64,000 bases of DNA from Lepidodermella squamata. Taxonomy: Eukaryota > Animalia > Gastrotricha. The position numbers and the translations under genes are program-made. Position 1 is the first letter of the stretch. Every line of letters begins with the position of its first letter. A model generated the notes under the pieces. The model made no database searches. It was not told the origin of the DNA and saw only the letters and a list, made by a program, of their open reading frames with translations. The stretch spans positions 558,001 to 622,000 of the forward strand of contig JBLDXI010000030.1 in assembly GCA_047495785.1 (NCBI GenBank), in the 5' to 3' direction. Of the stretch, positions 714 through 60,024 are shown piece by piece.

Positions 714-2187
714 TCAGATAAGCATCGATTTCTTCACGCACTGTGAACTGCCGAAGCTCTTACCGACACATAAGCTGGAATTGAAACAAATATTATTTGC
801 GTTGCAATGAAGCTCAAGTGAAGTCTTACTAGTCATCGCAGCAAGGTCCGTTATCGCATGATTCAGTGGAGCAGCCCTGTTGCTGCGGTTTTTGGGCGAA
901 GCAATACCCAGTCGTATAGCCTCGGGTAGAACAGAAGCTGTTTGAAGGAATGTTACAATTTGATTTAACATGCGGTCTCGAACTTACTATCCCTCGCAAC
1001 ATGGCAAGCCGTCCAAGCAGGTTTCTGTCGAACATTTCGGCTGTTCGGTGGGTTTCACTTCGCTCTGTTGGAAGCAAATTCCGGTGGTAAAGCCATGGTT
1101 AGAACAGTAGCTGTGTAAAAGGCAATGTTTCAATCTTCATATTCAGCAATCGTCTATAGCTTACTATCCCTCGCAACATGGCAAACCATCCATGCAGCTG
1201 TCTTTCGAGCATTTTGGCTGCTCGATGGGTTTCACTTCGCTTTGTTGGAAGCAAATTCCTGCGGTGTAGCTATGGTTAGAACAGTAGCTGTGAAAGAAAA
1301 CTTGTTATCGCTGCTTCAAGTACTGGACTGCAACTTACTATCCTTCGCAACATGGCAAGCCGTACAGGCAGGTGTCTGTCGAGCACTTTGGCTGCTCGAT
1401 CGGTTTCACTTCGGTTTTTTGGAAGCAGAATCCAGTGTTGAAGCCATGGGTCTCGCAGTAGCTATGAAAAACATCGTCACGCTTTGAAGCTTCAGTTGTT
1501 AAATACTATAACTTACTATCCCTCACAACACGGCAGGCGGTCCATGCAGGAGTACGTCGAACAGCTATCGTTTTTCGGCTCGACTGCCTGTTGGAAGCAG
1601 ATTCCTGTGGTGAAGCCATGTTTAGAACAGTAGCTGTGTACGAGAGAATGTTAATATCTTCATATTCAATACTGGACGGCAACTTACTATCCCTCGCAAC
1701 ATGGTAAGCCATCCATGCAGCTGTCTTTCGAGCACTTTGGCTGCTCGACGGCTTTCTTTTCGGTATTTGGAAAGCAGAATCCAGTGTTGAAGCCATGTTT
1801 TTCACAGTAGCTTTTTAGGATATCATTTTACTCAACAGCTTCAGGAAATGATCATGACTTACTATCCCTCGCAACACGGCAAGCGGTCCATGCAGGAGTA
1901 TGTCGAGCAGCTATCATTTCTCTGCTGGATTTGTTTCACCTCGGGTTCCTCTACAACTTGTGGTGCACTTTTCGGTAGGCACATACCAATCGAAAAGCCA
2001 TTCATGGAACAAGTGCTATTCAATGAAGGGATGTTAGATGCGTTGACGATGAGGTTGAATAAGAAACTAACTAGTCACCACAGCAAGGTTTGCCCACGCC
2101 ACAGTCAATCGTCACGCATGTTGGCTCCGAAGCCGTAACTGCAGCAAAAACGAGTAAGGAGGACAGAATCCTAATTGCAGCTTTCAT
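714..2187 (-). CDS. Knottin gene A: secreted precursor with 8 tandem ICK-like domains (9 exons)
   Basis: ATG 2187, MKAAIRILSSLLVFAAVTAS signal peptide. Eight ~50-60 nt GT-AG phase-2 introns, each just after CC-x-[GD]. Spliced domains e.g. CSKDSCMDGLPCCEGYYCSKHGFTTGIC (C-x4-C-x5-CC-x4-C-x9-C). Ends LCVGKSFGSSQCVKKSMLI* at 714. Confidence 0.9.
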
Positions 2188-2321
2188 TTTAAGGTAACTA
2201 GGTGGTAAATCCGAGAGTTGTAGAATGAGCCGGAGTGTCGTGCTGCCATTTTAAAGGGCCCTTATCGCGTCATTGTTTTGCTTTCTCAAGAGTGCTTTCT
2301 ATTTTTAGGGCTATTAAACAC

Positions 2322-2343
2322 CTTATCTTGCATATAAAGGTCA
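2322..2343 (-). promoter_or_regulatory. Conserved knottin-family upstream motif (GATA-type AGATAA plus AAGGT[C]A-like element); other copies at 3523, 7525, 8854, 10118, 13996, 14959
   Basis: Plus-strand consensus TTATCTyGcnTATrAAGGt, found 134-167 nt upstream of the ATG of genes A, B, C, D, E, F and G. Confidence 0.7.
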
Positions 2344-2772
2344 CAAATTGTCTTGAGTTAACAAAATAATGGAGTGCTGTGTCTGCTGATAGCGAATCTA
2401 GGTTGATGGCCAAACCTTTTCCTTTTAGTTTAGGCGAATGAATCGGCTAAGCACAATCTTTTTGTCATGTTAAATGCAGCGGGCGCGAATTAAGCTGCAT
2501 CTTATATATTGATTGTTTACCTCAGTTTTAAGATAGAAGGTGACTTTTTACCTGGCTGCTTTTTCTCATCTACTAATTTACTGGGAGGAGCAGTTGCTCC
2601 TGTCGTTCAATCGTGTTTTTTAATGTGTAAGTATCACTAATCAAGGCCTATTTCCTCAATGTAAGAACGTTCATCTTTTATCCAATTCATTGCTGCATCG
2701 CTACACAGTTTTGTATAAATTTCAGAATTTGACACCGTTTAATGGCCCATCCTTGTTAGTTACTCTGATTCC

Positions 2773-3377
2773 TTATCCAAGCAGTGACTTTTTCACGCAA
2801 CGGGTGTTACCGAAAGATTTGCCAACGCAATAGCTGAAATAAATTGAAATGTTCAATCTGTGAGTTGGGAATTGTGAGGACGTACTAATCGTCGCAGCAA
2901 GGTCCCTTGTCGCAAGATTCAGTCGAGCAAGCCTCTGCCTTTTGGCTGAAGCAAAGTCCAGTGGTGTAGCCATGAGTAGAACAGATGCTGTGGTAGAATT
3001 TGTTGCGTTTTCTTTGCCTTCTTTATTGAATTCAAACTTACAGTCCCTCGCAACATGGCAGACCCATGTCACACTCAACATTCGAGCATGACGGCTTGCT
3101 CGATGGATCGATTGGCTTCACAACGTCTTTCACTTCATCCTTCTCTTTCTCATTTTGCTTGAAGCACATGCCGTAGGTATAGCCCCTCCGGGAACAAACG
3201 CTATGATGTAACGAATACGTTATATTTTAGCTAAAGCCGAGATCAATGAACTTACTATCCATCGCAGCAGGGTAGGCCCATGTCACACTCTACTGTGGAA
3301 CACTTATGCTTACTCGGTGAAGCTGCAACTGCAGCGACAAAAAGACTGATGACAACGACTCCAAAGGCTGCTCTCAT
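2773..3377 (-). CDS. Knottin gene B: secreted precursor with 3 ICK-like domains (4 exons)
   Basis: MRAAFGVVVISLFVAAVAASPSKHK-CSTVECDMGLPCCDGY|VCSRRGYTYGMCF...CSNVECDMGLPCCEGL|ICSTHGYTTGLCF...CSTESCDKGPCCDDY|YCVGKSFGNTRCVKKSLLG*. Same intron position as gene A. Confidence 0.9.
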
Positions 3378-4148
3378 TTTTGAGAAATGCGATTGTCTAT
3401 TATCTGCAAAAGCTGAAACCAATGCGTCTGGATTTTTCCTACCAACTCATTATATAGGTTTTATATGGGCCTCAGCCTTATCAATTTCACATTGCTCTTT
3501 TCTGAGTGCTTTTCAAAGAGGTTTATCTCGCTTATGAAGGTCAAAAAGCCACGTTATCTGAGTCATCTCGGTTTTTGTGGATAAATGAAATGTCTTTTGG
3601 ACTGAAAAAACTCAGCATATCAGCTGTTTTAAGCCTCACTTCATGTCGAAAGCGTGTTGGCGTAATTGTTTAGCTTCATTGCTCGGTGACTGATTACACA
3701 CGATCGAATTTCACCATTGTCCAACTTTTTTTATCCAGCATCAGAGACTCCTTAAAACTTGACCGGAGACTCGATTTAGTTAAGGAAGCAAACTATTCTC
3801 CCGTTCACAGACAATTGAAGATTGGTATTGTTGAGTAGTCCTTATCTCTGTAGTTCTCTGCTCAGTCTGATACTAGCATCGCCAGGTAAGTATAATAATA
3901 GTTTAATTAGCTTTAACATTCCAGACAATTTGCGAATAATCATGCAACTGATCACGCAACTGATGACCTGACTAATTGCAGGGTGAACGATCCGGCGAGA
4001 AACATCTAATAATAGGGGCGACTAGGAACTAACTTCAGCCGATTTTCTTCATTAGATATTATGCGATATTAGTGTCGATGCCCAAATCGTTCAAATCTGC
4101 AGTAGAAACGAAATACAACTGCTGCCTCCAAAGACAACATTCTCAAGA

Positions 4149-6548
4149 ATGATGTCTCGTATTGTGAATCTGATTCTCGTATTAGGCATCCGGTTATGTA
4201 CATCGCTGAAAAGAAACAACCTATCGTTACTACAGGTTTACCCTGAATCTCACCTGCCCTGCCGGCCCTCCATCCAAATCGTTATTGACTCTGTTAATAA
4301 CAGAACTGACATTTTACCCGACTACAACATCGTTTCTGATTTCAGAGATGAAGCAAATTTCTCTCTTGGTCCTACCCCAGTTCGCGAACTAGTGAAATAC
4401 GGGAGGGAATGGGAGGGCAGATCTAATGATCCCACATACATTCGATCACCCATGTATATCGGGCCTTTCTTTTCGATTGCGTGCAAAGTCCTAGGAAAGG
4501 TGCTGAAGTACTATGACATGGTAGCGCTTAGTATTGGATGCGGTGCTCCATTTCTGGCTGATCACGTGACATATCCGAACTTGTACTTGGTACAATCGAC
4601 TGATGAAATTGTGGCTATGGGAGTTATCCACTTTCTCAAGGATATCGGCAAATGGTCGAAGATCGGAATAGTATCGATCCCCTCAAACCCCAACAACTAC
4701 ATAGCTGCTACTTATGCCAATGAGTTCGCTCTGAAAGCCAACATTTCAGTGCCTATCTTCATTATTGGAATAGATTTGGAAGATGACGTGATCGATGCGA
4801 TCAAGTATCACGACGTTCGAATCATTGTCCCTTTCATCACCGATGCGCCAATTCTGTGGAAATTTATCTGCAAATGTTTCCTGTCTGGTATCAGTGGTCC
4901 ACGGTACTTGTTCATCCTCAACAATTTCCTTGCTGCTGACCCACGTAATTTAATCCTACAAGACTCCAGATGCACGAGAGAAAATATGGCAGATCAGTTT
5001 AAACGATTTATATTCGCTGGCACTGTCGTTGCTGTTACGGACGAGAGCCGAAAGTCCGAGCTAGGCTACAACACTTATCAGTTCGATCAAATGCTATATG
5101 ACAGACTGCTAAGACCAAAAGAACTAACAGCTAGTAGCTTGAAATACATCTGCCACGATACAGCGCTGATGTCAGTCTTCGCACTTCATGACGCGGATTT
5201 GCGTTTGAAGGCCCAGTACAACATGTCTCTATTAGAAATGAACACGAACCCAGGGTTGGTCATGCGTGTCGTAAATGAATCTGTCTTGAACATCAACATA
5301 TCCGGTTTGAGGGGTCAGCTGTACTTCAGTAAACGGGGTTTCATGGAAAATGACAGAATATTATTCACCTACTGGAACAACAATGGCTATGTTAACCCCT
5401 ACTATACTGTAGAAAAAGAGGACAGCGAGCGCACGGGCCTCTACTACGGCCGTTATTCAGTCATTTCGAATGGCGTCTTTCAATGGCCTGGTTGGTCTGA
5501 CGGTAGACCACCAAGAGATTCGGCTAATATTGAAAAACTTGCCTCTGAAGTCAATGCTAACGTTCGCACATCTGTTATTGTAATATCATGCTTGATCTCG
5601 TCGCTTCAAATATTTCTGGGTTCTGCGACACCCAGGAGCCTAAATTCGTTGTCTTCAAATCTTAAAATCATTGCTTACATTGGCTGCCTGTGCCTCAATG
5701 GATCTGCAGTTGTTCATTCCCTGAAGATAGCCGAAAATCCTTACTTGATCGGCATACTGAGGGTCGCTCTGCTGATTTTCGCGCTATCATTTGTCAACGG
5801 AATCCTAGCCTTTCGAGCAGTTTTCATTGCATATAGACTTCGCGAGAGGCACGTAGCTCTAAAACCAGTCAATTCGCATAGGCCTTTAGCTATAAGTCAT
5901 TCGGGAGCCACCTTGCATTCGAACTTCGACCACAATTACCGTTTGGCCAATCCCCATGCGCACTTGAGAGTCGAAAAAACAGCGATTCACGGATCTTTTA
6001 CGCCACAACCTTTAAAGGATCCCCTGAAGCAAGAAATCGAGTCAGATATCGACAAGGGGGTAGTTATTGGATGTGCGTTTTTCGTGGCTATAAATATGGC
6101 CATTGTCTTGGCTTGGCTGACTTCTGACGGCTTCTCCTGCCAGCAATTCATCTCTACAGGAGGAGATAATTACGATGAAATCACGGATACATCCTACGAG
6201 ATTTCCGTAATTCATTGCAGGACGAAAAACAACGTAGCTTGGATCGCATTTTTCATCATTTTTCACACTCTGGTGCTGTTAGTCGGCTTACATCAGAGTT
6301 ATAGAATCAAACAACGCCTTAGGGCTAATCAAACTTATGTCTGTTCTGAAATCGTCGGTATTATTTGTGGCGTCCTCAACGCATTGGTCCTTCTGCTGTG
6401 TTCAGTCTTGATAATAGTCGCTCTATCGGATCAAGTTCGCCGGCATGTCGCAGTATCTTTAATGGCGCTTATTCTATCCCTCACATCGTCGTTATGCCTG
6501 TCCTACAAGTCTTTAATGCACGCTTTTTCCGTAACTGGAGAATCGTGA
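4149..6548 (+). CDS. Class C GPCR, GABA-B-receptor-like (Venus flytrap domain + 7TM, no cysteine-rich domain), intronless
   Basis: 799 aa ORF with signal peptide; VNNRTDILPDYNI, YIGPFFSIAC, YPNLY, W..IGI, HDVRII, G.SGPRYLFIL, W..GRPPRD motifs, followed by multiple hydrophobic helices. Confidence 0.85.
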   Translation: MMSRIVNLILVLGIRLCTSLKRNNLSLLQVYPESHLPCRPSIQIVIDSVNNRTDILPDYNIVSDFRDEANFSLGPTPVRELVKYGREWEGRSNDPTYIRSPMYIGPFFSIACKVLGKVLKYYDMVALSIGCGAPFLADHVTYPNLYLVQSTDEIVAMGVIHFLKDIGKWSKIGIVSIPSNPNNYIAATYANEFALKANISVPIFIIGIDLEDDVIDAIKYHDVRIIVPFITDAPILWKFICKCFLSGISGPRYLFILNNFLAADPRNLILQDSRCTRENMADQFKRFIFAGTVVAVTDESRKSELGYNTYQFDQMLYDRLLRPKELTASSLKYICHDTALMSVFALHDADLRLKAQYNMSLLEMNTNPGLVMRVVNESVLNINISGLRGQLYFSKRGFMENDRILFTYWNNNGYVNPYYTVEKEDSERTGLYYGRYSVISNGVFQWPGWSDGRPPRDSANIEKLASEVNANVRTSVIVISCLISSLQIFLGSATPRSLNSLSSNLKIIAYIGCLCLNGSAVVHSLKIAENPYLIGILRVALLIFALSFVNGILAFRAVFIAYRLRERHVALKPVNSHRPLAISHSGATLHSNFDHNYRLANPHAHLRVEKTAIHGSFTPQPLKDPLKQEIESDIDKGVVIGCAFFVAINMAIVLAWLTSDGFSCQQFISTGGDNYDEITDTSYEISVIHCRTKNNVAWIAFFIIFHTLVLLVGLHQSYRIKQRLRANQTYVCSEIVGIICGVLNALVLLLCSVLIIVALSDQVRRHVAVSLMALILSLTSSLCLSYKSLMHAFSVTGES

Positions 6549-7199
6549 ACTCGCCAAATTCCGCAGATATCATATTTTGTATTCTTTTTCTGGCTTCCCT
6601 CTCAACTCACTCTTTACTTCTAATTAATAAGCATAATATTTAATTGGTGCGTAAAAGTGACCCGACAAAAAGACACATTGCGTTGAAAGAAATTCTCGAC
6701 CATAATCAGCAGACAACTTGTTTTTGACTGTAATTAAAACGGCTTCATGTGAAGTCACTTTTAAAACCGACAAAAATAGCGCGTTGTAAATTTAGTCAGT
6801 CAAAAAATCAGCAAGAGATTGTAATCATTGACGTAGTATTTGGACATACAGTGTGCCGGAAATAGAAAAAAATGGCTCAATGCATGTAAGCGCAGATGTT
6901 CAGCTTTTCCTAGTGTTCAGACACGCGACTGGCTTGGCGAAGATGCAAGAAGTTAGTTTTACGCCAGTTGTTTCTATTTCCGGCAAATTGGCGCACAAGT
7001 CACGATACCTATATTTTCCTGAACTAATGCTCAAGTGCATGACATTTGGTGTGAATTGAGGAGGGTGACACGCTTGAGAGCTGTGAAGCTGTAAGCTGTA
7101 ATATATAAGTATATAAATCAAGGATTCAGGTCCTAGCTCGTCACCAAGCCAACGAGATGCTGGTTTGCTATCAATTTTCTCCGATATATGCCGCAGATA

Positions 7200-7358
7200 A
7201 TAGGAACGAACCAACTATCTAAATTTGAAACTCACTATCCATCGAAGCAGGGCAGGCCCATGTCACACTCCCATAAGGAACACTTAGGCTTACTTCGGCG
7301 GAGCTGCAGCTGCAGCGACAAAAAGACTGATGGCAACGATTCCAATGGCTGATTTCAT
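7200..7358 (-). pseudogene. Knottin pseudogene C (paralog of gene B exon 1)
   Basis: MKSAIGIVAISLFVAAAAPPK* arises from a 1-nt insertion relative to gene B. The downstream frame gives CSLWECDMGLPCFDG (CC changed to CF) then a GT donor. No intact later exons. The upstream motif is retained. Confidence 0.75.
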
Positions 7359-7850
7359 CTTTGAGGAATTCGCTCGTTTATTATATGGGAAATCTGAAAA
7401 CGGCACCTCTAGAGCTTTCTTATCAACATTAAGCTCGTTCTTATGGCCCTTAGTCTTATCGCTTTCTCATTGCTCTTTCCCCGTTGAGAGCATTTCAATG
7501 CATCTGAGATTCATTTTAAGATGTTTATCTCGTATATGAAGGTCGAAAAGCTAAATAATCTGAATCATCTCGGAAATGAAATATTTTTTAGACTGAAATC
7601 AGCCTTCAAATATTTTGCTCGTTGAATCTTTGTAGTTGGTCAATAATCAGTACTAGCGAGAGCTCTTTTCCTGGAACAGCTGGTTAAAAATCTCGAGAAT
7701 TACAAGTTGCAAAAGCATTATTGGTTTATTGTTTATAATGTTCTAGCTGAAGAAATTAATTGCTGCTGAACTAATCATTTCAGAAGAGTGATAGTTTGCT
7801 GGTATTTTGTTAGTATTATTCCACTTCTGTCTCAGATGAAGACAATCGCT

Positions 7851-8713
7851 CTAGCTTTTCGGTACGCACTGGCCATAATTCGCGAAATAGTGAGAGCAAA
7901 CGCTGTTGGTTGATGAAAAGTAGTATTAATGTCGGCAAATGCATCAGTTAAATGGAGAACTTACAGTCCCTCGCAGCATTTCAATCCATGTAGACAGTTG
8001 TCAGTCGCGCAATTGTCGTTTGGCTTCACGACGTCCTCCACCTCAGGCTTCTCTTCCTCAATCTCAGCTTCCTGAAAGCACAGGCCGTAAGTAAATCCTC
8101 TTTTCGAGCACACGCTATTGAATGAAAATTAGAAAATTTAAAATGCATGATTTGATTAAATGGAGAGCTTACAGTCCCTCGCAACATGGTAGTCCCATAT
8201 CACACTCAACATTCGAGCATGTCGGCGGTGGAGTGGTTGGTTGCACGGCGTCCTCCACTTCAGACTTCTCTTCTTCTATCTCAGCTTCCTGAAAGCAAAG
8301 GCCGTACGTGAATCCCTTCTTCGAACATACCCTGCCAGATAATGAATAGAATGAATGCCAGCTAATGAATTCGTTGAATGGAGAACTTACAGTCCCTCGC
8401 AGCACGGCAGACCCATGTCGCACTCAACATTCGAACATGTAGGCGGTTGAGTGGTTGGTTTCTCGATGTGTTTCTCTTCCTCTGCCTCACTCGGCTTGAA
8501 GCACAGGCCGTACGTGAAGCCTCTCTTCGAGCAGACGCTGTTAGATGATGAATGGAATATGCCAATAGATGCTTTGATTAATTGCAGAACTTACAGTCCC
8601 TCGCAGCAAGGCAGACCCATGTCACACTCGGTGTTCGAGCATGTAGGCTTACTAGGTGAAGCCGAGACAGCCGCGATAACAGCGGCGGCAACTATACAGA
8701 ATGCAACTTTCAT
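7851..8713 (-). CDS. Knottin gene D: 4 ICK-like domains (5 exons) with acidic Pro-rich linkers
   Basis: MKVAFCIVAAAVIAAVSASPSKPT-CSNTECDMGLPCCEGL|VCSKRGFTYGLCF...; last exon VCSHYFANYGQCVPKS*. Confidence 0.9.
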
Positions 8714-9509
8714 TTTAGGAGAATGTGCAGCTTTGAATTCTGAGAGTGTGTGTCACTCCAATACCGGCGTTAAATAGGCTTTTCCGGGCTGGCGTGGTTT
8801 CCAATCATTCGTTCTCACGCACTTGGTTGTTTACGGCGGCGCAATTAAGCAGCTTATCTCGCCTATGAAGGTTAAAAAACCGCATTATCAACAAAGCATG
8901 CTCACTCATTACACAAGCTAGGAAAAATCTGACATCATATCAAATATTATATCCCCTTCCCATGATACCATTGTTGAATAACTCGATTAAGGCTTGATCC
9001 GAGTTGATAATTGATTATTAAAATGCAAGTTGTTTAGAGGCCTCTGCATTGGCTGTATCTCATTGGGGAGTGAATGAAAGGGTTAGGTTTTGAGGTACTC
9101 AACCGAAGGCTATTTTAACGTCACGGAGTTCACATAACCTACTTAAGCCTCTTAGGAACTGCAACACATTCGCATTATAATAGCCGGAACCCACTGATGG
9201 CGAGACCCCCAAGGATGGGAATCTTTTATATTGTATATTGAAGTTCAAAAGTTGATTGATCACAAAATATGTATAAACAATGGGCTCTTCCGCATTAGTC
9301 TTATCTGTTTCTTTTACCGTTAGTAGAAAGTAGAAAGCTAGCGACTTGCGAGCAAAATAATAGCATTACTATTGTATTCCTTTATTATGCCTTTTACAAT
9401 AGAAAGGACATTTTGAACAAGTTGTTTCGCCAGAATTACACAGAACCGGTTTGCTCACGTCGAATTTGTGTGATTCCATCTTCGTTTGAGCGTGAAAACC
9501 CGTCTTTAT

Positions 9510-9982
9510 TTAGCGGGAAGCATTCGCCATATTTTCGCTTGTGTCTGCTGCCGCGAAGCATTGGCCGTAGGTTCCGAAGTTGGACGAACAATGACTGTTG
9601 GTTGTAATGTATATTTAGAAATGTTTTGCTTAGTTATTTTTTAACACTTACTATCCGTCGCAGCACTTCAATCCATTTAGGCAGGAAACGGTAGAGCATT
9701 TGTCTTTTGGCTTCACAGAGTCTGCCACTTCATGCGACTCTACCTCTACCTCACTCGGCTTAAAGCACAGGCCGTACGTGAAGCCTCTCTTCGAGCAGAC
9801 GCTGTTGGAGAATAAATTCGAGAATGAATACTGAATGTCAATAGATGTTGTAGAACTTACAGTCCCTCGCAACAAGGCAGGCCCATGTCGCACTCAGTGT
9901 TCGAGCATGTAGGTTTACTCGGTGAAGCCGAGACTGCCGCGATAACTAGGGTGATGGCAAAAATACAAAATGAACTTTTCAT
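9510..9982 (-). CDS. Knottin gene E: 2 ICK-like domains (3 exons)
   Basis: MKSSFCIFAITLVIAAVSASPSKPTCSNTECDMGLPCCEGL|VCSKRGFTYGLCF...CSTVSCLNGLKCCDGY|HCSSNFGTYGQCFAAADTSENMANASR*. Confidence 0.85.
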
Positions 9983-11053
9983 TTGCAGACAACTATTATG
10001 GAAAACTGGAAATGCGCTTTATCATAACCTTTCTATTGCCCTTATATAGGCTGGTCTGTGACTATTTGGCTTCGCTTGGGACACGCCTTGGGTGTCTTTT
10101 TGGGGCTATTAACTGGCTTATCTCGCTTATGAAGGTTGGAAAATTCGCTCGCATTATCAAGACAACGCTCAAGCTTCGGTAGGAAAATAATCAGGCAAGG
10201 GTAAAAATAATATTTCCCACACAGAAGGGCAAAATCGTTCATACTAAATACTTCAAATGTAGTAGCTAATAATATAGCAATCATCTCGTAGCCCATCGTC
10301 ATTTCATCAAGCCTGCGTGAAATGAAAATGGATGCCAATTATTTTCAATATTTTTCGTCAATTCTTTCAGCGTCGCAGTCAGACTGGTTCCAGATCGCAG
10401 CTCACTTCCTCCACCAAAAAGGGCTCGTTAACTATGAATAGACCTTCGTATACTGTTTCGAGAATAGGGCCGTAGTTTGGCCCTGATTTTCCAGTCATTA
10501 GAACTAAAACACTAGGCGCGGCTAAGCGTTGTGATCGGTAGTGTGAAGGCTAAGAATTTCAGCCCCGGTTTGAAATGTCCCAACTAGTAGCAATCGCAAC
10601 AATTTCTGCAAAGTCGCCTTTGCTAATTCTCTTTCAGACTTGGCGATGCGGTCAAAATTACTTCCGGTGGATCATCTTTGATTAGTTGCTGATGCCGGTT
10701 GGTTTCATGTCTTGGAACGCCTGCCGCGCTTCTGCTTGCTAGCTGCTTGATCTTCTGTAGCCTCCTGCTTAGGCTGCGGTGTTGCTACAGTTATTTATAA
10801 TGGATCATTCAATTCATAATTCATATTCAATTCAATTCATAGTCATCAAAGTTTACAGAAAGAACCCAATATCCTCTCGAAAAAATGGTTTTCGATATGC
10901 GTTGCTTGGTAGCCGGAAAGCGGAGTCATTTCAAGCAGCCTACAGACTACAACATGAATCAGAATAATTTGCAAGAGTTGTACTGTGTACTGAATAACTA
11001 TTTATTAAATATTACAGAGGATTTTTCAGAGAGTTTTACGCGTCCATTCAAAC

Positions 11054-12350
11054 TTAAGCTAACATCAATATGTAGAGAACAATATCGGCGAGACACGTCG
11101 AAATTATAACGATAACGCCCAAGATTAGATCAAGAAGTCGAATTAAGGTAATTTTCCTCGAATTCACTTCCAGGATTTTTTGATCCGCGCGCTGTGCGTA
11201 GTTAGAAACCGCCAACATGTAGCAAGTTAAAGCCATGCCAATGACGTACTTCAGAGCTATTCCAACGACGAGGTAAATAACTTCAGAGGTCGATGGAACC
11301 TCAGCTGCAAGTAAGCCGAGGGTAACAGAGTTAGCTAAGACCACAGTCATGCTGAATGCTGGCCTGTCAGGCGTATCAGGCGGCATACTCAAGCAGAACA
11401 GTTGGGTGATGAAGAAGCCATAGGTCGGAACAAAAATTGTTGTAACGTAATAACGCGCTTGGCGCTGAAACCGTATTTTCAGGTTGATTTCATACTGTAT
11501 GAAGTTATCGCCATGCTTCCCAGGAAATTGATCAAACGTTGTAATATTTGTACCCATATTTTTAAGTAGCCATATATCATTCTCGGGCATGAAGTTTTCC
11601 AGATGCTCGAATTCTAGCACGACAAATTCAGAAACATCGAACGTATCGACTGGCCACAGATTCAAAGAACAGTTGAATACATCAAATGGAAACTTTGCGA
11701 AGGACGTGTCGCAAATCGATGTTATGGTACCCATTGCATCTAAGCTTCCATAGAACTTTCGGTCATCTGTCAAGCCAGCTTTCGCGTTCTTTGTCATTCT
11801 AACAATATTATAAACTGTATGATTCATATTAGGAATAATTGATGGTAGATTACGATTCGAATGGAAAATTGGTTGCGAATCCATTTTCGTGGGAAACCAC
11901 CGGGTACCATATCGGTTCATCATCCGGTTTCCCGATTGGGATGGGAAAAGAGACCAGAGTCGGATACTTCTCGCAGGCTTCACGTGAAATATCAGTATTT
12001 AGGCGCGAGCAGTTGATTGGCTGTCCGCAGTTGTAGAGCCACTCGAAGCGAAAAACTCCACTCATGCAAAGCCTTGGAAAATAATTCAAGTAGTTTTCAA
12101 GAAAAATCAAACGACGCCTTTCTCACGTTTTGTCCATATCAGCGATATTAACGAAACGGGTTGTTACGATTCTGAGGGATACTTTGAGCTTCTCACCACA
12201 TTTCATCTTGCTTTCAGCCGGCAGATTAGTTGAGGTTGAATCGCGGTAGGCTTCCATAAGGTCGGCTCGAATAGTCGAGATATCAGAAATTGAGTCTGAA
12301 GGCCTTATCGAAATGGTGAAAACCGTAATCAGAACATGCATTACCGTCAT
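11054..12350 (-). CDS. Divergent Cys-loop ligand-gated ion channel subunit (about 3 exons)
   Basis: Signal peptide exon ~12350-12127, exon ~12072-11858 (FRFEW...IWYP), and a last exon with the Cys-loop CDTSFAKFPFDVFNC and four TM helices (RYYVTTIFVP; PDRPAFSMTVVLA). Confidence 0.85.
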
Positions 12351-12983
12351 GCTTATGCCACTGAAATCTGAAATTCCTATTGGCGTTGCGATGATATGCT
12401 ACAGTCAGATCCAAAACTGCTCTTTTTTGTTTGCATTTGATTATTTGATTGAAAAGCTTGCAATATCAGGTGGAGTGCCGAGTCAGTTTGATTGCAGCTG
12501 CAGAGGGTGTGTTGCGTCCATTCCGGTATTGCTCATCCGGTATTGTTCATCAAATGCTATAGAAGGCCGTAAAATCATTAACGCTGAGGTTTGAGTTCCT
12601 ACAAAAAGCCGCCTTTTTCCCATCGTGTCAAAAACGCGTCGGTGTAGCGGTTTTAAGTGCTTTGGCAAGTGTTTTGGGCATATTGGGTCAGCTATGGTGT
12701 TGGTTTTCATCTTGAGCTAACATGATATGTTCTGGGCATTAAATATTAAATACGGCAAATCCAAATCACTGCTTGCAGTATCATGGTTTCTCCTTTTCGA
12801 GGAGCAGTTGGCGAATTAAATCTCAAGTACTCAAAATGAAATATCATGACATCTTGTAAAATTCATTCATTGAATGAGACAAAAGATTTGTTTATTGTTT
12901 ATCATCTCAAGTATTCATTATAAGGTTATTTTGTTATGTAATCCATGTTAATCAGATGTTAGAGATGAAGAAATAAATTTGCC

Positions 12984-13847
12984 TTAATTTTTCGGGAAGC
13001 ACTGGCCATAAGACGCGAAATAGTGAGAACAAACGCTGTCAGATTGATGACACACATGTATGATAACTATTACATGGTTAATTTGAAAAAACTTACTATC
13101 CTTCACAACACTGAAGTCCTTCTACGCAGTTGTCAGTAGAACAGTTTTCACTTGGCTTAACAGCATCCTCCACTTCGGGCTTCTCTTCTTCTATCTCAGT
13201 TTGCTGCAAGCACAGGCCGTAAGTGAATCCTCTTTTCGAGCACACGCTATTAAAGGGTGATTAAAACAATTGTAAATGAATGATATGAATGAATGGAGAA
13301 CTTACAGTCCTTCGCAACACGGTAGTCCCATATCACACTCAACATTCGAGCATGTAGGTGGTGGGGTGGTTGGTTTCACGGCTTCCTCCACTTCAGGCTT
13401 CTCTTCTACAATCTCAGCTTCCTGAAAGCAAAGGCCGTACGTGAATCCCTTCTTCGAACATACCCTGCCAGATAATGAATAGAATGAATGCCAGCTAATG
13501 AATTCGTTGAATGGAGAACTTACAGTCCCTCGCAGCACGGCAGACCCATGTCGCACTCAACATTCGAACATGTAGGCGGTTGAGTGGTTGGTTTCTCGAT
13601 GTGTTTCTCTTCCTCTGCCTCACTCGGCTTGAAGCACAGGCCGTACGTGAAGCCTCTCTTCGAACATACGCTATTGGGTAATGAATAGAATTATGACAAG
13701 AGATGGTTTGATCAAATGGACAACTTACAGTCCCTCGCAGCATGGCAGACCCATGTCACACTCAGTGTTCGAGCATGTAGGCTTACTCGGTGAAGCCGAA
13801 ACTGCCGCGATTAGGGCTGTAGCAACAATGATAAATGCAGCTTTCAT
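12984..13847 (-). CDS. Knottin gene F: 4 ICK-like domains (5 exons); close paralog of gene D
   Basis: MKAAFIIVATALIAAVSASPSKPTCSNTECDMGLPCCEGL|...|VCSHYFASYGQCFPKN*. Confidence 0.9.
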
Positions 13848-14390
13848 TTTGGGAGAATGCCCAATTCTGATATCTGAGTGTTTTTTCAAAATGTCGACCC
13901 TACACCTTACCATACCGGCGTTAAATAGGCCCGCATGGTTTTCCAATCATTCGCTCTCACGCACTAGGTTTGTTTACGGCGCAATTTAGCAGCTTTTATC
14001 TCGCCTATGAAGGTTAAAAAAACCACATTAACTCGGTTTATCAACAAAGCGTGACCACTTATTTCCTAAGCTAGTTTTTACGAGGCACGAGGCCTCTGCA
14101 TCGGTTGTATCGTACTGAAGAGTGAATGGAAGATGTGATGGGCGAAGATACCCCCAGCAACCAAACGGGGTGCAACTTGAGGCTAATAAGGCCACGCAAG
14201 CTCGAAATCGGAACTTTTTTCGACTGGGAGAAACAAACAAACAAATTGCGACTTGAATGATTTACTAGCTTCAAGAAAAATGCAGGAATGACTTCTTGTT
14301 GCAATGATAATTTCAACTACGAAATAACTGCAATATTCAGCTGGATTATGGCTATTCAGTTAGTCTTTGTCGGAGATAGAGAAGCGGGCC

Positions 14391-14825
14391 TTAGTTTAAC
14401 GGGAAGCACTCGCCATATGTCACGTACTTGGTCGAACAATAGCTGGTTGATGGAAGAGAGTTATTTGTCAGCACATTCAGTGTAAAGTTCAAAATCTTAC
14501 TATCCGTCGCAACACCGTAGTCCACTGTTTTTGCAGTTGTCATACGAGCATTTAGCTGTTGGCTTCTCGGCGTCTTTCACTTCATGGTTCTCTTCGTGTA
14601 CAGCTGATGCCGGGAAGCATTGGCCGTAGGTTCCGAAATTAGAAGAACAATGACTGTAGGTTGGCATGTAATTAGAATTATCATGTGATAATATTTTAAT
14701 GCTTACTATCCGTCGCAGCACCTCTGTCCATTCAGGCAGGAGTCAGTCGAGCAACTGTCCATTGGTGCAGCCGAGACTGCCGCGATAGCCATGGCTATGG
14801 CAATAAGACCGAATGACGCTTTCAT
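14391..14825 (-). CDS. Knottin gene G: 2 ICK-like domains (3 exons)
   Basis: MKASFGLIAIAMAIAAVSAAPMDSCSTDSCLNGQRCCDGY|HCSSNFGTYGQCF...CSYDNCKNSGLRCCDGY|YCSTKYVTYGECFPLN*. Confidence 0.88.
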
Positions 14826-15569
14826 TTTGAGAAAATGTTTGTGGAAATTGGAAATGTGAATGCGATTCATCCCATCTTAAACGCCTTTATATAGGCCTTT
14901 ACTCGCCTATTCAGCTTTCCGCACTGGGCTTTCAGGGGTATCAAAAGTTGCAAGTTTCTTATCTTGCGTATGAAGGCGGAACACTGCATTAGCTCCAGTC
15001 ATCAAGACAACGCACTCGAAACCCTAAATAATTGGACACGGACAATAAAATGCCCACCTGAGAGGACAAGATGCGTTTTATTTCCTTGCCGAAAGTCATT
15101 CGATAGTAGGAAAAAATTTCGGGGAAGCCGGTCCAGTTAAACTGTACAAACAACAGGATCACGGACGAAGGGTCGGATAAATCATCGAAACATTCCTGAA
15201 GCACTATACGAGTTTTTCGCATTACATTATACCTGCTTTGATTCAATTTACTCAATTCTCAATCTATCTCAATTTCTCTTTTGAATCGATCGATAAGCCT
15301 AGATGAGAAAGCATTGTCACCTCAGTCTAGCTGTGACCTTATCTTTGCGATCACGATTCATACATCTGCATTTGTTCATGCAATACGTTTCAGTAAAAAT
15401 ATTATTTACTTAAAGAAACGCTGACAGGTTGGTTTATTATATTATGTCTAACAAAAGCGACCAAGCAGAATTAACTCTCGTTGAACAGATTTCTTTAACG
15501 GAATCACAAAAATAGCATGCTTATGGCTACTTTGTTAGGGATTCAGTCTTTGTTGAAACGGAAGATACT

Positions 15570-15830
15570 CGCCTCAATTTGGCGGGAAGCAAAGTCCGCA
15601 TGTCCCGAATTTGTGAGAACTCTGTTTATTGATGGAATGGAACGCATGTAACAAAAATCATCTTTTGCTTGATTTAAAAACTTACTATCCGTCGCAACAC
15701 TTCAACGCAGTTACACAGCTGTAATATTCAGCTTTTGGCATCTCGACGGCTTCATGGTTCTCTTCCTTTATGGCTAAGCCCGGGTAGCATTGGACGTGAG
15801 TTCCAAAATTATGCGAACAATGAGCCTGCT
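15570..15830 (-). pseudogene. Knottin pseudogene H (decayed paralog of gene G exons 2-3)
   Basis: HCSHNFGTHVQCYPGLAIKEENHEAVEMPKAEYYSCVTALKCCDG|GT has lost the first Cys. The terminal exon is degenerate and no signal-peptide exon was found. Confidence 0.7.
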
Positions 15831-16473
15831 GAGATTTATGAATCGAAACGAGCCGGAGGCGAGTTGAGATGAGTAAATCGAGTACGGCAAGTACGGCGAG
15901 TTGAACTAGGGCCGTATTTCAAGCCTAAATATATGACCCTGTAGTTTTGGGTTTTCCACCTCGACCTTGCGATTCGCGATATCACATTTCCCCCTGTACT
16001 TCGCGCTCTGCTTTGATCGAGTGTAACACTGGAAATAGCAAAGTTGAAAGGCTGAACTGTAGATATTATTTCAATATACGGCCCATGTTGCCTGGTGACA
16101 ACATTACGCCGAGAAATCTCCTGTTGCAATAGGAGATTGGAAATTTAAATAAAGCTACTTGAATTACGGTTGAGGTATGAAGCTATCACGACTTCACATC
16201 ATCAACATTTAGTCGATCCGGGCTCAGGGTAATCTCGCTAACTTCAGACCATTTTTTCACATTTGTAATGGGTTGATTTGTTATTCTTATGTTGGTGTTG
16301 GTGTTGACGTTTCATTTTATGAAAAAAAATGATAAATGAACCTTTTTTATTTCAGGGCGCGAATTATGATTCAAGCTCCTCACATTACCGAGATATAAGT
16401 TCACCGAAACGCAAAGGAACACATTAGCAACCAAATTGCCCACTTGCAGGGTAAGTAACTAGAGCACATGCAG

Positions 16474-16723
16474 TTACTTGGTGCCCGGATCTCTCAGGCA
16501 TGCGTGGCCCCAGGAGCAGTAGCTGGGAATTACAATTCGAATTAAGCAAGAATATTCCTAAATACTTTGAATCTTACTATTTATCAGGGCAGCATGGCAG
16601 AGTCCAGCAAAAGTCGGTTGCGCAAGGCTGCTGCGTCGTCCCATTCGTAAAAGTGTTTTGGGGTGCTGAACTAACAACAGCAGCAACGGCTAGAATTGCG
16701 AAGAGAATTGCGAGAAGCTTCAT
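16474..16723 (-). CDS. Knottin gene I: single-domain, divergent ICK-like secreted peptide (2 exons)
   Basis: MKLLAILFAILAVAAVVSSAPQNTFTNGTTQQP-CATDFCWTLPCCPDKY|YCSWGHACLRDPGTK*. The phase-2 intron lies between CC and C5, as in the other genes. Confidence 0.8.
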
Positions 16724-16970: not shown

Positions 16971-19373
16971 TCACGAATAATTAACAGCAACCGCGATGGA
17001 GCGTTTAAATAACGCCTTCGACGAAATTTTAACAAATCCGTAAAAAATGATCATTACTGTTGATAATGAGTAGGCAAGAAGACCAATTGCGACAAGGGTT
17101 GAGCTTTGGTGAGCTTTGTTCGGCTGATTTTTCGGCAATGCCATTTCACCAAAAACCACGGCTAGAGTGATGAGCAGAGCATTCCAAACAGCTACACGGT
17201 AAGTCTTCACATCGAGTTGGAACCTTAAGCGGAGCCATTTAATCGAGATTTTACGTATGCTGGCCGCCTGAAAACAGCCAAGAGCCAGTAGTATGCCCTG
17301 TATCGAGATCTGGGTGATTATCAGATAGTTGTTACTTTTCGACCAACAGTAGCGGACTTGAATGTTGAAGAATGAATCTAGCTCTGGGCTGAACTCAGTC
17401 TCAGTGAAGTAAGATTCGTAGCTCATAGGCTCAGCCAGTTGCCAAATTACGAAAATCAAAACGCAAACCGTTACGATGATAGAAATAGCTCGAATGATAG
17501 CTTTTTGAAGGGCTATCACCGCTAACTGTCTTTCCGCTTCTGCCGTGCCAACCTCCAGCGATAATTTCTTACGAACACGACGGCTGATGTAGTAATGCCA
17601 GCTAACGAAAAATGGCATAGTTGCCATTCGAATGAAGATACCCGAATTAACCATTGATAGACCTAGTACACTGAATAGATCTCTGATGATGCAGTAAATT
17701 TGAGGGAAGTAGACTGGGCCTAACATTATCATATAAACTGATACGTTCAGTAACAAACATCCGATAAGAATCGCGGATCCACTGCTTGTGTTGAAGTATG
17801 GCATTCGAGCATACCTAGCTCTTCCTTTCAGGCACACAACGGTAATAACCCCCAGGATTACTTCAACAGCCATCACCAGCGTCGCTACGGCACATAGCAC
17901 TTGAATCGATGTGAAGTCGATCGACCCTTGAACACTGAACACTACTGATAGATCTTTAGGGGCTTTGCCAGTGGAAGTGGCCCATTTAACTGGAGCCATT
18001 ACTTCAATAGTTTGGGTGGATATATTTTCAAATGTTGCTCGATTTCCGGTGAAATTGACCAAAAATGTAACATTATTGCCGTATATTCCGTTTCCAAGTC
18101 TCTGAACGAGGAAAGACGTTTTCTCCATAAGTGCAGTTTTCTTGTTTCTCGATCTAAAGTAATCAAAATAACTCCCCATGTCAGCGAAGACCTGACTAAT
18201 TGGCCCCCATGCTGATTTAGAGCCTAAATCACGTAAGCTCATTCCACGTGACGCAAGTGCTTCTCCAGTCGCATTGAGGAGGAAGAGGCCGCTGAGTAAT
18301 TGACGATTCAACGCAGCTAATTTAGTCGCGTCGAACGAGCAATTTCGCTCAGATAACGATCTGATTTGGCCTACTTTGCTGTAAAGAAATCCCGTATCAA
18401 CGACGGCATAGACTATTGAAGAATATAGAAAAATCAGAGGATCCGTAGTCCAATGAGTAAGAAACAGCGAAATTCCGATTTGTTGCATCTGGATTGAACG
18501 CTCGCATGGTGCAGCAGTTGTATTAATTTTGTAACTCACGCAAACCGAATTCGGGAAGAACATAACGTATTCCGGGGCTCGAATCCCTGCCGCGTAACTA
18601 TCACACATGATCATCGCGCAATCTTCAGGTAGGAAGGTCCCTGATAAAACGATAATTCTCGCTATGCCAAGCTGCTTAATGGCTAGGAATTCGTTGTATG
18701 ACACACCAACCTCAGCTTGAACGACTTCTATGCCATTCGCCTCGAAAAGGCTCGCATTTCGCATGAGGACATCTGCTGATCGAAAGTCTTCAGTAGCCGC
18801 GGATAGCAACGCGATTTGTCGCCACTTTCCAATATGGAGGATCGTATTTATGGTCGCATGCTTGATAAAGGTGTTGCTGGGAATGTCTGTCCAGATGTCT
18901 ACTGGCCAGCTCCACATCGATCCAGGACCTATGCCATATACTTGCGACAGTGAAAGAGATCTGCGAATCAGCTGAAACACGCGGTCATAGCGCAAGTCTT
19001 CATTTTTCAATGAAAGTGTAGGTCCAATGAGAAACGGTGAGAGTGAAGAGTTAGCTGGAATTTCACCAAGATTAGGTAAATAGAAATTAACGACATCCTG
19101 CGCTGTAAATGCCAACTCAGTCTCGTAATATCGTATCCGGACGTTGTAATCAGTTAAAAACTTTGAGTTTGAGTTGATGCTATCGACCAGGTTATCCATT
19201 GCGATTTTCGAGCATCTCCTATCATTTTCCTCGCCTGTGACGCTTGAGTTGTTCGAAACTGCGAGGCCGGTTGTGAAAACAGGTATGATAATCGAATGCG
19301 GCTTAGAAATGCAATTTGATGAGGCCAAAATGGCAAGAAACCAGAAATGTAATAACGTAATTGATTTTGTCAT
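16971..19373 (-). CDS. Class C GPCR, GABA-B-like, intronless; paralog of 24549-26963
   Basis: 800 aa; signal peptide, INSNSKFLTDYNV, IGKWRQIALL, GIRAPEYV, W..GKAPKD, then 7TM. Confidence 0.85.
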   Translation of the reverse strand: MTKSITLLHFWFLAILASSNCISKPHSIIIPVFTTGLAVSNNSSVTGEENDRRCSKIAMDNLVDSINSNSKFLTDYNVRIRYYETELAFTAQDVVNFYLPNLGEIPANSSLSPFLIGPTLSLKNEDLRYDRVFQLIRRSLSLSQVYGIGPGSMWSWPVDIWTDIPSNTFIKHATINTILHIGKWRQIALLSAATEDFRSADVLMRNASLFEANGIEVVQAEVGVSYNEFLAIKQLGIARIIVLSGTFLPEDCAMIMCDSYAAGIRAPEYVMFFPNSVCVSYKINTTAAPCERSIQMQQIGISLFLTHWTTDPLIFLYSSIVYAVVDTGFLYSKVGQIRSLSERNCSFDATKLAALNRQLLSGLFLLNATGEALASRGMSLRDLGSKSAWGPISQVFADMGSYFDYFRSRNKKTALMEKTSFLVQRLGNGIYGNNVTFLVNFTGNRATFENISTQTIEVMAPVKWATSTGKAPKDLSVVFSVQGSIDFTSIQVLCAVATLVMAVEVILGVITVVCLKGRARYARMPYFNTSSGSAILIGCLLLNVSVYMIMLGPVYFPQIYCIIRDLFSVLGLSMVNSGIFIRMATMPFFVSWHYYISRRVRKKLSLEVGTAEAERQLAVIALQKAIIRAISIIVTVCVLIFVIWQLAEPMSYESYFTETEFSPELDSFFNIQVRYCWSKSNNYLIITQISIQGILLALGCFQAASIRKISIKWLRLRFQLDVKTYRVAVWNALLITLAVVFGEMALPKNQPNKAHQSSTLVAIGLLAYSLSTVMIIFYGFVKISSKALFKRSIAVAVNYS

Positions 19374-20920: not shown

Positions 20921-21003
20921 GTTGTTGGGAATAACGTTTCGAAAAACCCTCACATTCGACTTGACTGAGCAAATAAGACCGAAAGGTGAAGCTTTTATTA
21001 AAA

Positions 21004-22307: not shown

Positions 22308-22564
22308 TTTATATACGATCAGCATACTGTAATCAATCAGACAAAAAAATTGTCTCTGATGTATGCATATTGCATAGGTTACTAGGATTCATCCTAGTTT
22401 GACAGCAAAATCGATAAATTGCCGGGCTGATTACTGGAAGCGGTAAATAAATTTACCAATCCATGCTATTCAAACAATCTAGGTATTATAGGCTTTGTCT
22501 TGGCTGTTTACTCAAGCAAGAAAACGTTTCCACCAATAAATATGCCGCAATATAATAATGAATG

Positions 22565-51066: not shown

Positions 51067-51093
51067 TGCATCAGTACATACATCATCAATAGC

Positions 51094-59989: not shown

Positions 59990-60024
<35 letters not shown>

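What the first reader, a model, noticed from the sequence alone, without database searches (positions are those of the whole stretch)
714..16723. Hidden cluster of secreted multi-knottin precursors (1-8 tandem ICK-like domains), a candidate toxin/defence locus
Seen: seven intact genes (8, 3, 4, 2, 4, 2 and 1 domains; 24 in total) and two pseudogenes, all on the minus strand. Each intact gene has a signal peptide and C-x4-C-x4/6-CC-x4/5-C-x5/9-C domains. They are almost invisible in the ORF track because exons are only ~50-160 nt. Established: C-C-CC-C-C is the inhibitor cystine knot framework of conotoxin O-superfamily and spider toxins, and tandem double knots (DkTx, Hi1a) gain avidity for multimeric ion channels. 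Inference: a rapidly evolving venom, mucus or antimicrobial family with up to octavalent members.
Basis: partly seen in the sequence, partly recalled or inferred. Interest (0 to 1): 0.85.

Follow-up and report, generated by a model that had tools for sequence, protein, structure and literature searches.

The report
Secreted tandem six-cysteine mini-domain gene cluster
A real, hidden cluster of seven small-exon genes encodes secreted proteins made of one to eight copies of a 28-residue six-cysteine, knottin-like module with no detectable relatives anywhere; its fold and its job (toxin, lectin or matrix protein) are still open, and it is conserved rather than fast-evolving.

Summary
On the minus strand, 714-16723 holds seven intact genes with 8, 3, 4, 2, 4, 2 and 1 domains (24 in all) and two decayed copies. 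Each intact gene has a signal peptide and a TATA-like box. Most have a polyA signal. All 24 introns are 50-62 nt, GT-AG and phase 2, and each splits a domain between Cys4 and Cys5. Twenty of 24 domains are C-x4-C-x5-CC-x4-C-x9-C. The motif occurs 27 times against 0.9 expected by chance.

The cysteine framework fits a knottin, but no search found a relative in Pfam, PDB, 1.84 billion protein representatives, the word-indexed collection or metagenome contigs. An EGF/CREMP-like disulfide pattern remains a rival. The family is not fast-evolving (dN/dS 0.14-0.27). Domain cores carry net charge -3 to 0. The 17 linkers hold one dibasic site in total.

I read these as intact, multivalent "beads-on-a-string" secreted binders (SCREP class), not cleaved antimicrobial peptides or a diversifying venom arsenal. 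The host is unidentified, probably an invertebrate animal.

The parts
714..2187 (-). G7: 8-domain gene, 9 exons
   Evidence: Exons 2072-2187, 1863-2015, 1688-1810, 1517-1633, 1339-1461, 1165-1287, 988-1110, 830-937, 714-774. The signal peptide starts MKAAIRIL. A TATA-like box lies at -68 and AATAAA at +114. The tandem period is 177 and 349 nt, equal to one and two exon+intron units.
2773..3377 (-). G6: 3-domain gene, 4 exons
   Evidence: Exons 3256-3377, 3042-3200, 2886-2987, 2773-2833. One donor is GTACGT. The last domain is a distinct subtype, 81% identical to the last domain of G7.
7238..7370 (-). Pseudogene A: lone relic of a first exon
   Evidence: blastn gives 86% identity to the G6 first exon. 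The promoter and exon region 7229-7598 matches 3249-3607 at 73%. Breaks: 1 frame change and 1 lost cysteine. No downstream exons were found.
7851..8713 (-). G5: 4-domain gene, 5 exons
   Evidence: Exons 8595-8713, 8391-8537, 8173-8331, 7965-8114, 7851-7902. The period is 218 nt. dN/dS is 0.14 against G3.
9510..9982 (-). G4: 2-domain gene, 3 exons
   Evidence: Exons 9861-9982, 9652-9801, 9510-9594. Its first domain is identical in protein to the first domains of G5 and G3, and its second is 89% identical to G2 domain 1.
12984..13913 (-). G3: 4-domain gene, 5 exons, paralogue of G5
   Evidence: Exons 13729-13913 (the likelier ATG is at 13847, MKAAF), 13524-13670, 13306-13464, 13097-13246, 12984-13035. 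The block 12989-14074 matches 7856-8921 at 83%.
14391..14870 (-). G2: 2-domain gene, 3 exons
   Evidence: Exons 14707-14870 (the likelier ATG is at 14825, MKASF), 14501-14653, 14391-14442. No AATAAA-type signal was found within 300 nt after the stop.
15583..15822 (-). Pseudogene B: internal plus terminal exon relic
   Evidence: tblastn gives 52% identity over a whole G2 internal exon (E 1.5e-15), plus a terminal-exon match. Breaks: no signal-peptide exon was found, 1 cysteine is lost, and there are in-frame length differences (5 gap columns). There are 0 stops in the matched frame.
16474..16723 (-). G1: 1-domain gene, 2 exons, most divergent member
   Evidence: Exons 16578-16723 and 16474-16522, with a 55-nt phase-2 intron at the homologous position. 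The framework is x4/x4/x5/x5. A TATTTAA box lies at -53 and AATAAA at +123.
4149..6548 (+). Neighbour inside the cluster: intronless GABA-B-receptor-like class-C GPCR ORF (799 aa)
   Evidence: Pfam ANF_receptor E 4e-12. The best PDB match is GABA-B receptor subunit 1, E 2e-13. It is not part of the family. It is listed because it interrupts the cluster.
11054..12350 (-). Neighbour inside the cluster: Cys-loop ligand-gated channel-like gene
   Evidence: It hits Neur_chan_LBD and Neur_chan_memb below Pfam's cutoffs. ORF 11054-11983 carries a C-x13-C loop with FPFD. It is not part of the family.

Best explanation
This is a lineage-restricted tandem cluster of seven functional genes and two decayed copies. 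The genes encode secreted 'beads-on-a-string' proteins. After signal-peptide removal, each protein is a chain of 1-8 small modules with 27-29-residue cores (24 in G1), six cysteines and presumably three disulfides. The modules are joined by 7-25-residue acidic or Pro/Thr-rich linkers that carry no conserved cleavage site, so the chain most likely stays intact and acts as a multivalent extracellular binder (the SCREP class). The module is most likely a knottin-type mini-domain. That inference rests on the framework C-x4-C-x5-CC-x4-C-x9-C and on an invariant Gly, usually preceded by an aromatic residue, in the C5-C6 hairpin loop. Domain number grew by unequal crossing-over of exon+intron units, and gene number grew by duplications of about 1.1 kb. 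Internal and C-terminal domains are different conserved subtypes, so the proteins are hetero-valent. Shown: gene structure, secretion signal, repeat architecture, purifying selection, charge, and lack of processing sites. Inferred: disulfide pattern, multivalent binding, and the kind of target. I lean towards a surface, glycan or matrix ligand in defence or mucus or a body covering, rather than an ion channel.
For: Gene models. Chance is excluded. Coding is supported by dN/dS of 0.14 (40.5 synonymous against 25.5 non-synonymous differences) and 0.27 among G7 units, and by exon GC of 0.50 against intron GC of 0.33. Signal peptides, TATA-like boxes in 7 of 7 genes and AATAAA in 5 of 7. Six Cys and one Gly are invariant in all 17 internal exons. 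Core charge is -3 to 0, and there is 1 dibasic site in 17 linkers. The tandem periods of 177, 218 and 349 nt equal exon+intron units. Duplications are gene-sized. Domain subtypes are position-specific. Pro-rich linkers under about 20 aa are typical of SCREPs (PMC9885460).
Against: No transcript or protein data are available. The fold is untested. AF2 on one internal exon gave pLDDT 69, and Foldseek found no PDB match. The only weak sequence echo that repeats at every module of its target is to a 2-disulfide matrix module, CREMP (E 0.55). The C5-C6 loop also resembles the EGF C-terminal signature, so the knot is not secure. Nothing identifies the binding target. Acidic linkers would also suit a mineral- or matrix-associated protein.
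Confidence: 0.45

Rival explanations
1. One reading: a venom or defensive toxin family of multi-knot ICK peptides, whose tandem knots give avidity for multimeric ion channels as in DkTx and Hi1a.
For: The C-C-CC-C-C framework and loop lengths fit an ICK. There are signal peptides and a tandem gene cluster. Both lobes of DkTx gave a weak match over C2..CC (E about 8). Bivalent ICK toxins are established (PMC6262176, PMC13172734).
Against: Selection is purifying (dN/dS 0.14-0.27), and domain cores are identical across paralogues. That is unlike a diversifying venom arsenal. Cores are anionic or neutral. There is no propeptide or processing site. The intron lies inside the domain, whereas the whole mature toxin lies in one exon in spider ICK genes (PMC13172734). 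No homology to any toxin family was found. It is not known whether the host is venomous.
Confidence: 0.17
2. A structural or matrix protein built of EGF/CREMP-like modules. The disulfides would be 1-3 and 2-4 in the first half and 5-6 in the second half, so each exon half would be its own disulfide unit. The proteins would form an extended, cross-linkable or mineral-binding component of an eggshell, cuticle, coat or adhesive.
For: The first-exon profile matches all four modules of PDB 9pgb (CREMP), best E 0.55, over P-x-C-S-x3-C-x2-G-x2-C. CREMP and EGF share the Cx4Cx5C spacing and form extended independent modules (bioRxiv 10.1101/2025.09.16.676614). The C5-x3-G-[FY]-x2-G-x-C loop resembles the EGF C-terminal motif (established knowledge, not tested). 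The linkers are acidic, selection is purifying, and the intron falls exactly between the two putative sub-units.
Against: The match is not significant. The x8 hairpin between Cys3 and Cys4 that defines CREMP and EGF is replaced here by adjacent CC. No exon hit a Pfam EGF or FOLN family at E<=10. The proteins are small (about 60-360 aa) and lack VWD or other polymerising domains.
Confidence: 0.2
3. Polyprotein precursors that are cut into single six-cysteine peptides, as in plant multi-knottin and cyclotide precursors or the processed hevein hololectins. The linkers would be discarded spacers.
For: Acidic spacers between cysteine-rich units are common in peptide precursors. A K-P-x(3-7) stretch recurs before Cys1, both after the signal peptide and in most linkers. 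Hevein hololectins can be processed at their linkers (PMC9127739, abstract seen).
Against: There is only 1 dibasic site in 17 linkers. No Asn/Asp position is conserved at the domain borders. Linker lengths vary from 7 to 25 residues. C-terminal domains are distinct conserved subtypes, which suggests that position within an intact chain matters.
Confidence: 0.1
4. Secreted peptide ligands (pheromone- or signal-like) that co-evolve with the GABA-B-like and Cys-loop receptor paralogues interleaved with them.
For: The cluster is physically interleaved with receptor arrays. A GABA-B-like ORF lies at 4149-6548 and another at 16971-19373, about 250 nt from G1. A Cys-loop gene lies at 11054-12350.
Against: Co-location may only reflect a region rich in lineage-specific tandem duplicates. 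The receptors and the peptides show no matching duplication pattern. There is no precedent for 8-domain ligands of such receptors.
Confidence: 0.05

Closest known systems
SCREPs (secreted cysteine-rich repeat peptides/proteins; Maxwell, Undheim & Mobli 2018, PMC6262176; ScrepYard, PMC9885460)
   Same: They have a signal peptide, high cysteine density (about 12% in G5) and tandem homologous disulfide-rich domains. The linkers are mostly short and Pro-rich. Both 'pure' and 'combinatorial' repeat architectures occur.
   Different: SCREP is an architectural class, not a homologous family. Two-domain forms dominate in ScrepYard, whereas here there are 2, 3, 4 and 8 domains. The domain is not recognised by any Pfam model, so it would fall in ScrepYard's 'unknown architecture' group.
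Bivalent spider ICK toxins (DkTx, Hi1a/Hc1a)
   Same: They share the C-C-CC-C-C framework, tandem repetition and domain gain or loss by unequal crossing-over. There is a weak local similarity over C2..CC (E about 8).
   Different: In spiders the whole mature toxin lies in one exon and the duplication is intra-exonic. A triple-domain ICK was called 'not previously described' in 2026 (PMC13172734). Here every domain is split by a phase-2 intron, the repeat unit is exon+intron, valency reaches 8, loop 1 is 4 residues, the cores are not cationic, and selection is purifying.
CREMP / EGF-like 2-3-disulfide tandem modules (PDB 9pgb)
   Same: They share the Cx4Cx5C spacing with a Gly before the third Cys, many tandem modules and flexible linkers. 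It is the best, though non-significant, PDB sequence hit.
   Different: CREMP has 4 Cys per module with an x8 hairpin and no CC. It has dozens of modules (81 in one chicken sequence) plus VWD/C8 domains. Here there are 6 Cys with adjacent CC, 1-8 modules and no other domains.
Hevein-type (CBM18) lectins and tachystatin-type chitin-binding knottin peptides
   Same: This is my recollection only. They have six- or eight-Cys knottin-like modules with aromatic residues near the C-terminal hairpin, and the lectins have 1-7 tandem modules. Tachystatin-type ICK antimicrobial peptides occur in arthropods (PMC2853521).
   Different: No named hit came back from Pfam or PDB at exon level, so no likeness is shown. 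Whole-domain comparison was not run. Those peptides are typically cationic, and these are not.
Nasonia multi-domain nasonins (PMC2853521)
   Same: They are secreted proteins carrying 4-5 repeats of a small cysteine-rich defence domain without protease processing signals, generated by exon duplication.
   Different: Those are defensin-like domains, each encoded by one whole exon bounded by phase-1 introns. Here the domain is split and the introns are phase 2. There is no sequence relationship.

Membership tests
Inhibitor cystine knot / knottin | Six cysteines in a C-C-CC-C-C framework within about 25-40 residues | tested here: met
   All 24 domains have it, with cores of 24-29 residues. Twenty have loops 4/5/0/4/9.
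Inhibitor cystine knot / knottin | Disulfides 1-4, 2-5, 3-6, with the third threading the ring formed by the first two | not testable with these tools
AF2 on one internal exon (the C5-C6 half, a linker and the next C1-C4 half) gave pLDDT 69, and Foldseek found 0 PDB matches. That is inconclusive.
Inhibitor cystine knot / knottin | Sequence membership in a curated knottin or toxin family (Pfam, PDB) | tested here: not met
   Exon-level hmmscan and PDB profile searches at E<=10 gave no knottin family. DkTx appeared only at E about 8.
Conotoxin O-superfamily | A conserved superfamily signal sequence, a propeptide with a basic cleavage site, and a single mature C-x6-C-type domain | tested here: not met
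   The signal peptide is followed directly by the first domain. Loop 1 is 4 residues, most genes have several domains, and there is 1 dibasic site in 17 linkers. The superfamily definition comes from established knowledge. No conotoxin hit appeared in Pfam.
Spider double-knot toxins (DkTx/Hc1a type) | Two ICK domains encoded together in the last exon of a 3-exon gene | tested here: not met
   Every domain here is interrupted by a phase-2 intron, and the exon+intron is the repeat unit. The spider gene structure is from PMC13172734.
SCREP architectural class | Secreted, cysteine-rich (>4 Cys, >10% Cys), with tandem homologous domains | tested here: met
   There are signal peptides in 7 of 7 genes. 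G5 has 25 Cys in 208 residues (exon lengths and peptides). Six of seven genes have 2-8 homologous domains. The criteria are from PMC9885460.
CREMP / EGF-like modules | Cx4Cx5Cx8C spacing with a beta-hairpin between Cys3 and Cys4, and disulfides 1-3 and 2-4 | tested here: not met
   The first two spacings match, but Cys3 and Cys4 are adjacent, so there is no hairpin. The PDB match has E 0.55. No Pfam EGF or FOLN hit was found. Connectivity itself was not tested.
Hevein / CBM18 chitin-binding domain | A match to the Chitin_bind_1 profile with its conserved aromatic and Ser/Gly positions | tested here: inconclusive
   No hit at exon level. The profile spans a whole domain, which could not be submitted.

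The most novel reading that the evidence does not exclude
These are true cystine-knot modules, which would make them the first animal proteins with 3, 4 and 8 tandem knots in one uncleaved chain. They would belong to an orphan family with a unique split-domain gene structure, in an unsampled animal lineage. They may have co-evolved as multivalent ligands or modulators of the Cys-loop channel and GABA-B-like receptor arrays that interleave with them.
Probability: 0.2. Interest if true: 0.75.

Novelty: new variant of a known kind. Interest (0 to 1): 0.5.

Why it matters
Multivalent disulfide-rich peptides are valued as high-avidity probes of channels and receptors. Natural examples with knottin-type domains stop at two domains, with one putative three-domain case reported in 2026. 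A conserved family with up to eight such modules, graded valencies (1, 2, 3, 4, 8) and distinct terminal modules would be a natural series for studying how valency and linker design evolve. It also shows concretely that ORF-based or prokaryote-style gene calling misses whole families whose exons are 50-160 nt. None of these proteins, nor any relative, is present in collections of about 15 billion predicted proteins.

Tried and rejected
- A profile of the 17 internal exons against 1.84 billion representatives gave 0 hits at E<=1e-3.
- A word-indexed search with an exon-bearing ORF found no candidate.
- Two metagenome DNA scans, one per subfamily, found pattern matches, but none was confirmed by tblastn.
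- Pfam and PDB searches at exon level gave nothing significant.
- AF2 on one internal exon, followed by Foldseek against PDB, gave moderate confidence and no match. A second exon was not run, because the tool returns no coordinates and so could not decide the disulfide pairing.
- Identifying the host failed. Exact look-ups of three intronless ORFs found nothing on record. Homology searches with the GABA-B-like ORF and a Cys-loop ORF found nothing. There are no tRNA or Rfam genes. The TBP-like ORF is too divergent and sits in a polB-bearing block. Two literature searches for receptor expansions were uninformative.
- Chance or antisense artefact is rejected, on dN/dS, splice signals and the shuffle test.
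- A cationic antimicrobial-peptide reading is rejected on charge.
- Kex2/furin-type processing is rejected for lack of dibasic sites.
- Further members elsewhere in the window are rejected, since tblastn found nothing better than E 0.02.
This breaks the rule against sequences from memory.

Full report
1. WHAT IS THERE

A six-frame scan for C-x3-6-C-x3-8-CC found 24 matches on the minus strand. All lie between 838 and 16624. That strand has none elsewhere, and the plus strand has three unrelated matches. Shuffled sequence gives 0.94 +/- 0.93 matches per window against 27 observed.

Reading the DNA and mapping donors, acceptors and phases gives seven complete gene models. In ascending coordinates they are:
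- G7, 714-2187, 8 domains
- G6, 2773-3377, 3 domains
- G5, 7851-8713, 4 domains
- G4, 9510-9982, 2 domains
- G3, 12984-13913, 4 domains
- G2, 14391-14870, 2 domains
- G1, 16474-16723, 1 domain

All 24 introns are 50-62 nt (mean 56), GT-AG and phase 2. They all sit at the same place, two or three residues after the CC pair, so every domain is split between Cys4 and Cys5. An internal exon therefore carries the C5-C6 half of one domain, a linker, and the C1-C4 half of the next.

Mini-introns of 46-57 nt also join ORFs in neighbouring genes, so this intron size is typical of the genome. Cluster exons are 50% GC and cluster introns 33%.

2. ARE THEY GENES?

Each model begins with M-K/R, a hydrophobic stretch and an A-x-A-like site. 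Each has a TATA-like box 53-88 nt upstream of the ATG. Five of seven have AATAAA 88-124 nt after the stop.

The two 4-domain paralogues differ by 40.5 synonymous and 25.5 non-synonymous changes, giving dN/dS 0.14. The four equal-length repeat units of G7 give 0.27. The main domain core is 100% identical in protein in G3, G4 and G5 although dS is about 0.4. The minus-strand frames are therefore coding and under purifying selection.

Two further copies are decayed:
- Copy A (7238-7370) is a lone first-exon relic with one frame change and one lost cysteine. No later exons were found.
- Copy B (15583-15822) keeps an internal and a terminal exon, but no signal-peptide exon was found. It has one lost cysteine and in-frame length differences, and no stops in the matched frame.

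I give counts only and have restored nothing.

3. ANATOMY OF THE PROTEINS

Twenty of 24 domains are C-x4-C-x5-CC-x4-C-x9-C. Cores are 27-29 residues (24 in G1). Core net charge is -3 to 0, with a mean of -1.3. Six Cys and one Gly are invariant in all 17 internal exons. That Gly lies in the C5-C6 loop and is usually preceded by an aromatic residue.

Linkers are 7-25 residues, acidic and/or rich in Pro and Thr. The 17 linkers together contain one dibasic site.

Domains fall into position-specific subtypes. The last domains of G6 and G7 are each other's nearest relatives (81%). The same holds for the last domains of G5 and G3 (79%), and for G4 domain 2 and G2 domain 1 (89%).

Tandem Repeats Finder gives periods of 177 and 349 nt in G7 and 218 nt in G5 and G3, which equal one or two exon+intron units. 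Between genes, the duplicated blocks are gene-sized: about 1.1 kb at 83% for G5 and G3, promoter included.

4. RELATIVES

None were found.
- A profile of the internal exons against 1.84 billion representatives gave no hit at E<=1e-3.
- The word-indexed collection gave no candidate.
- Two metagenome DNA scans gave nothing confirmed.
- Pfam and PDB at exon level gave nothing significant.
- The two weak PDB echoes of the first-exon profile are a 4-module cysteine-rich eggshell membrane protein (9pgb, E 0.55), matched at each of its modules, and the double-knot toxin DkTx (E about 8).

A short profile cannot see distant knottin kinship in so large a library. These blanks therefore say 'no close family', not 'no fold relative'.

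5. WHAT WAS LEFT OUT

The joined step was left out, meaning whole-domain or whole-protein searches and structure prediction. A domain has no single reference, and every intron has an in-frame stop straight after the donor.

The only joining done was inside scripts at codon level. The two bases before and the one base after each intron were read as one codon to test the phase (Tyr in 15 introns, Leu in 9).

AF2 on one natural internal exon gave pLDDT 69 with a hairpin at C5-C6. Foldseek found no PDB match. This decides nothing.

6. HOW IT MOST LIKELY WORKS

The proteins are secreted. With no conserved cleavage site and with position-specific domain subtypes, they probably stay whole as flexible chains of small disulfide-locked modules. 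That is the SCREP architecture, whose linkers are likewise short and Pro-rich (PMC6262176; PMC9885460).

The framework and loop lengths fit a knottin, and I put about 0.55-0.6 on that connectivity.

The main structural rival is an EGF/CREMP-like pattern (1-3, 2-4, 5-6). CREMP and EGF share the Cx4Cx5C spacing, and the intron would then fall neatly between two disulfide sub-units. Against it, the x8 hairpin that defines those modules is absent here.

On function:
- The lack of positive charge argues against classical antimicrobial peptides.
- The strong conservation argues against a diversifying venom arsenal.
- A multivalent binder of a surface, glycan or matrix target, in defence, mucus or a covering, is my best guess. 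It is inference, not a result.

7. COMPARISON AND NOVELTY

In spider ICK genes the mature toxin lies in one exon and bivalency arose by intra-exonic duplication. A triple-domain ICK was still 'not previously described' in 2026 (PMC13172734).

Nasonia nasonins show exon-duplicated 4-5-domain defence proteins without processing sites. Those are defensin-like, with one exon per domain and phase-1 introns (PMC2853521).

The present family combines a knottin-like framework, a split-domain phase-2 gene structure, valencies of 1-8 and no detectable relatives. I rate it a new variant of a known kind.

8. CONTEXT

The cluster is interleaved with intronless GABA-B-receptor-like ORFs of about 800 aa and with Cys-loop channel genes. 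One of the channel genes has a canonical C-x13-C loop with FPFD. This is my only basis for calling the host an animal.

No gene tested has a relative in the protein collections. The species is therefore unidentified. Nothing suggests human origin.

9. SLIP

Noticed in passing
window 48605-61326 (+): A block of a dozen plus-strand ORFs has slightly higher GC and negative GC skew. It includes a protein-primed type-B DNA polymerase fragment (55886-57241, PF03175, E 4e-8) and a divergent TBP-like protein (50079-50666, about 45% identical to TBP in one repeat). It may be a Polinton/Maverick-like or other integrated virus-like element. I described it only and fetched or assembled nothing.
   Followed up: partly
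window 4149-6548 (+), 16971-19373 (-), 24549-26963 (+), 33307-35706 (-), 36242-38563 (-), 43247-45523 (-): This is an array of intronless ORFs of 758-804 aa. The first hits ANF_receptor and GABA-B receptor subunit 1 structures. The others are similar in size, and the two tested (16971-19373, 24549-26963) had no Pfam hit above cutoff. Neither the first ORF nor a Cys-loop neighbour had any relative in the 5.8-billion-protein collection.
   Followed up: partly
window 11054-12350, 19639-23239, 29417-30007, 47271-48047 (all -): Several Cys-loop ligand-gated channel genes or fragments (Neur_chan_LBD/Neur_chan_memb) are interleaved with the receptor ORFs and the cysteine-rich cluster. One has a canonical C-x13-C loop with FPFD.
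   Followed up: partly
window 7856-8921 vs 12989-14074: Between paralogues G5 and G3, the four shared mini-introns are less diverged (JC 0.19) than synonymous sites (dS 0.40). The cause could be constraint on 56-nt introns, gene conversion or small-sample noise. This is unresolved.
   Followed up: no
window 31054-32442 (-) and 28349-29182 (-): There is an ankyrin-repeat ORF (Ank_2, E 2e-54) and an ORF with a weak, below-cutoff HEPN RiboL-PSP hit (E 1e-4).
   Followed up: no
window 1125-1487 (+), 8451-8777 (+), 13681-13989 (+): Long stop-free antisense ORFs (up to 120 aa) run opposite the cluster genes. They arise because the exon+intron units repeat, and they could mislead ORF-based annotation.
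   Followed up: no
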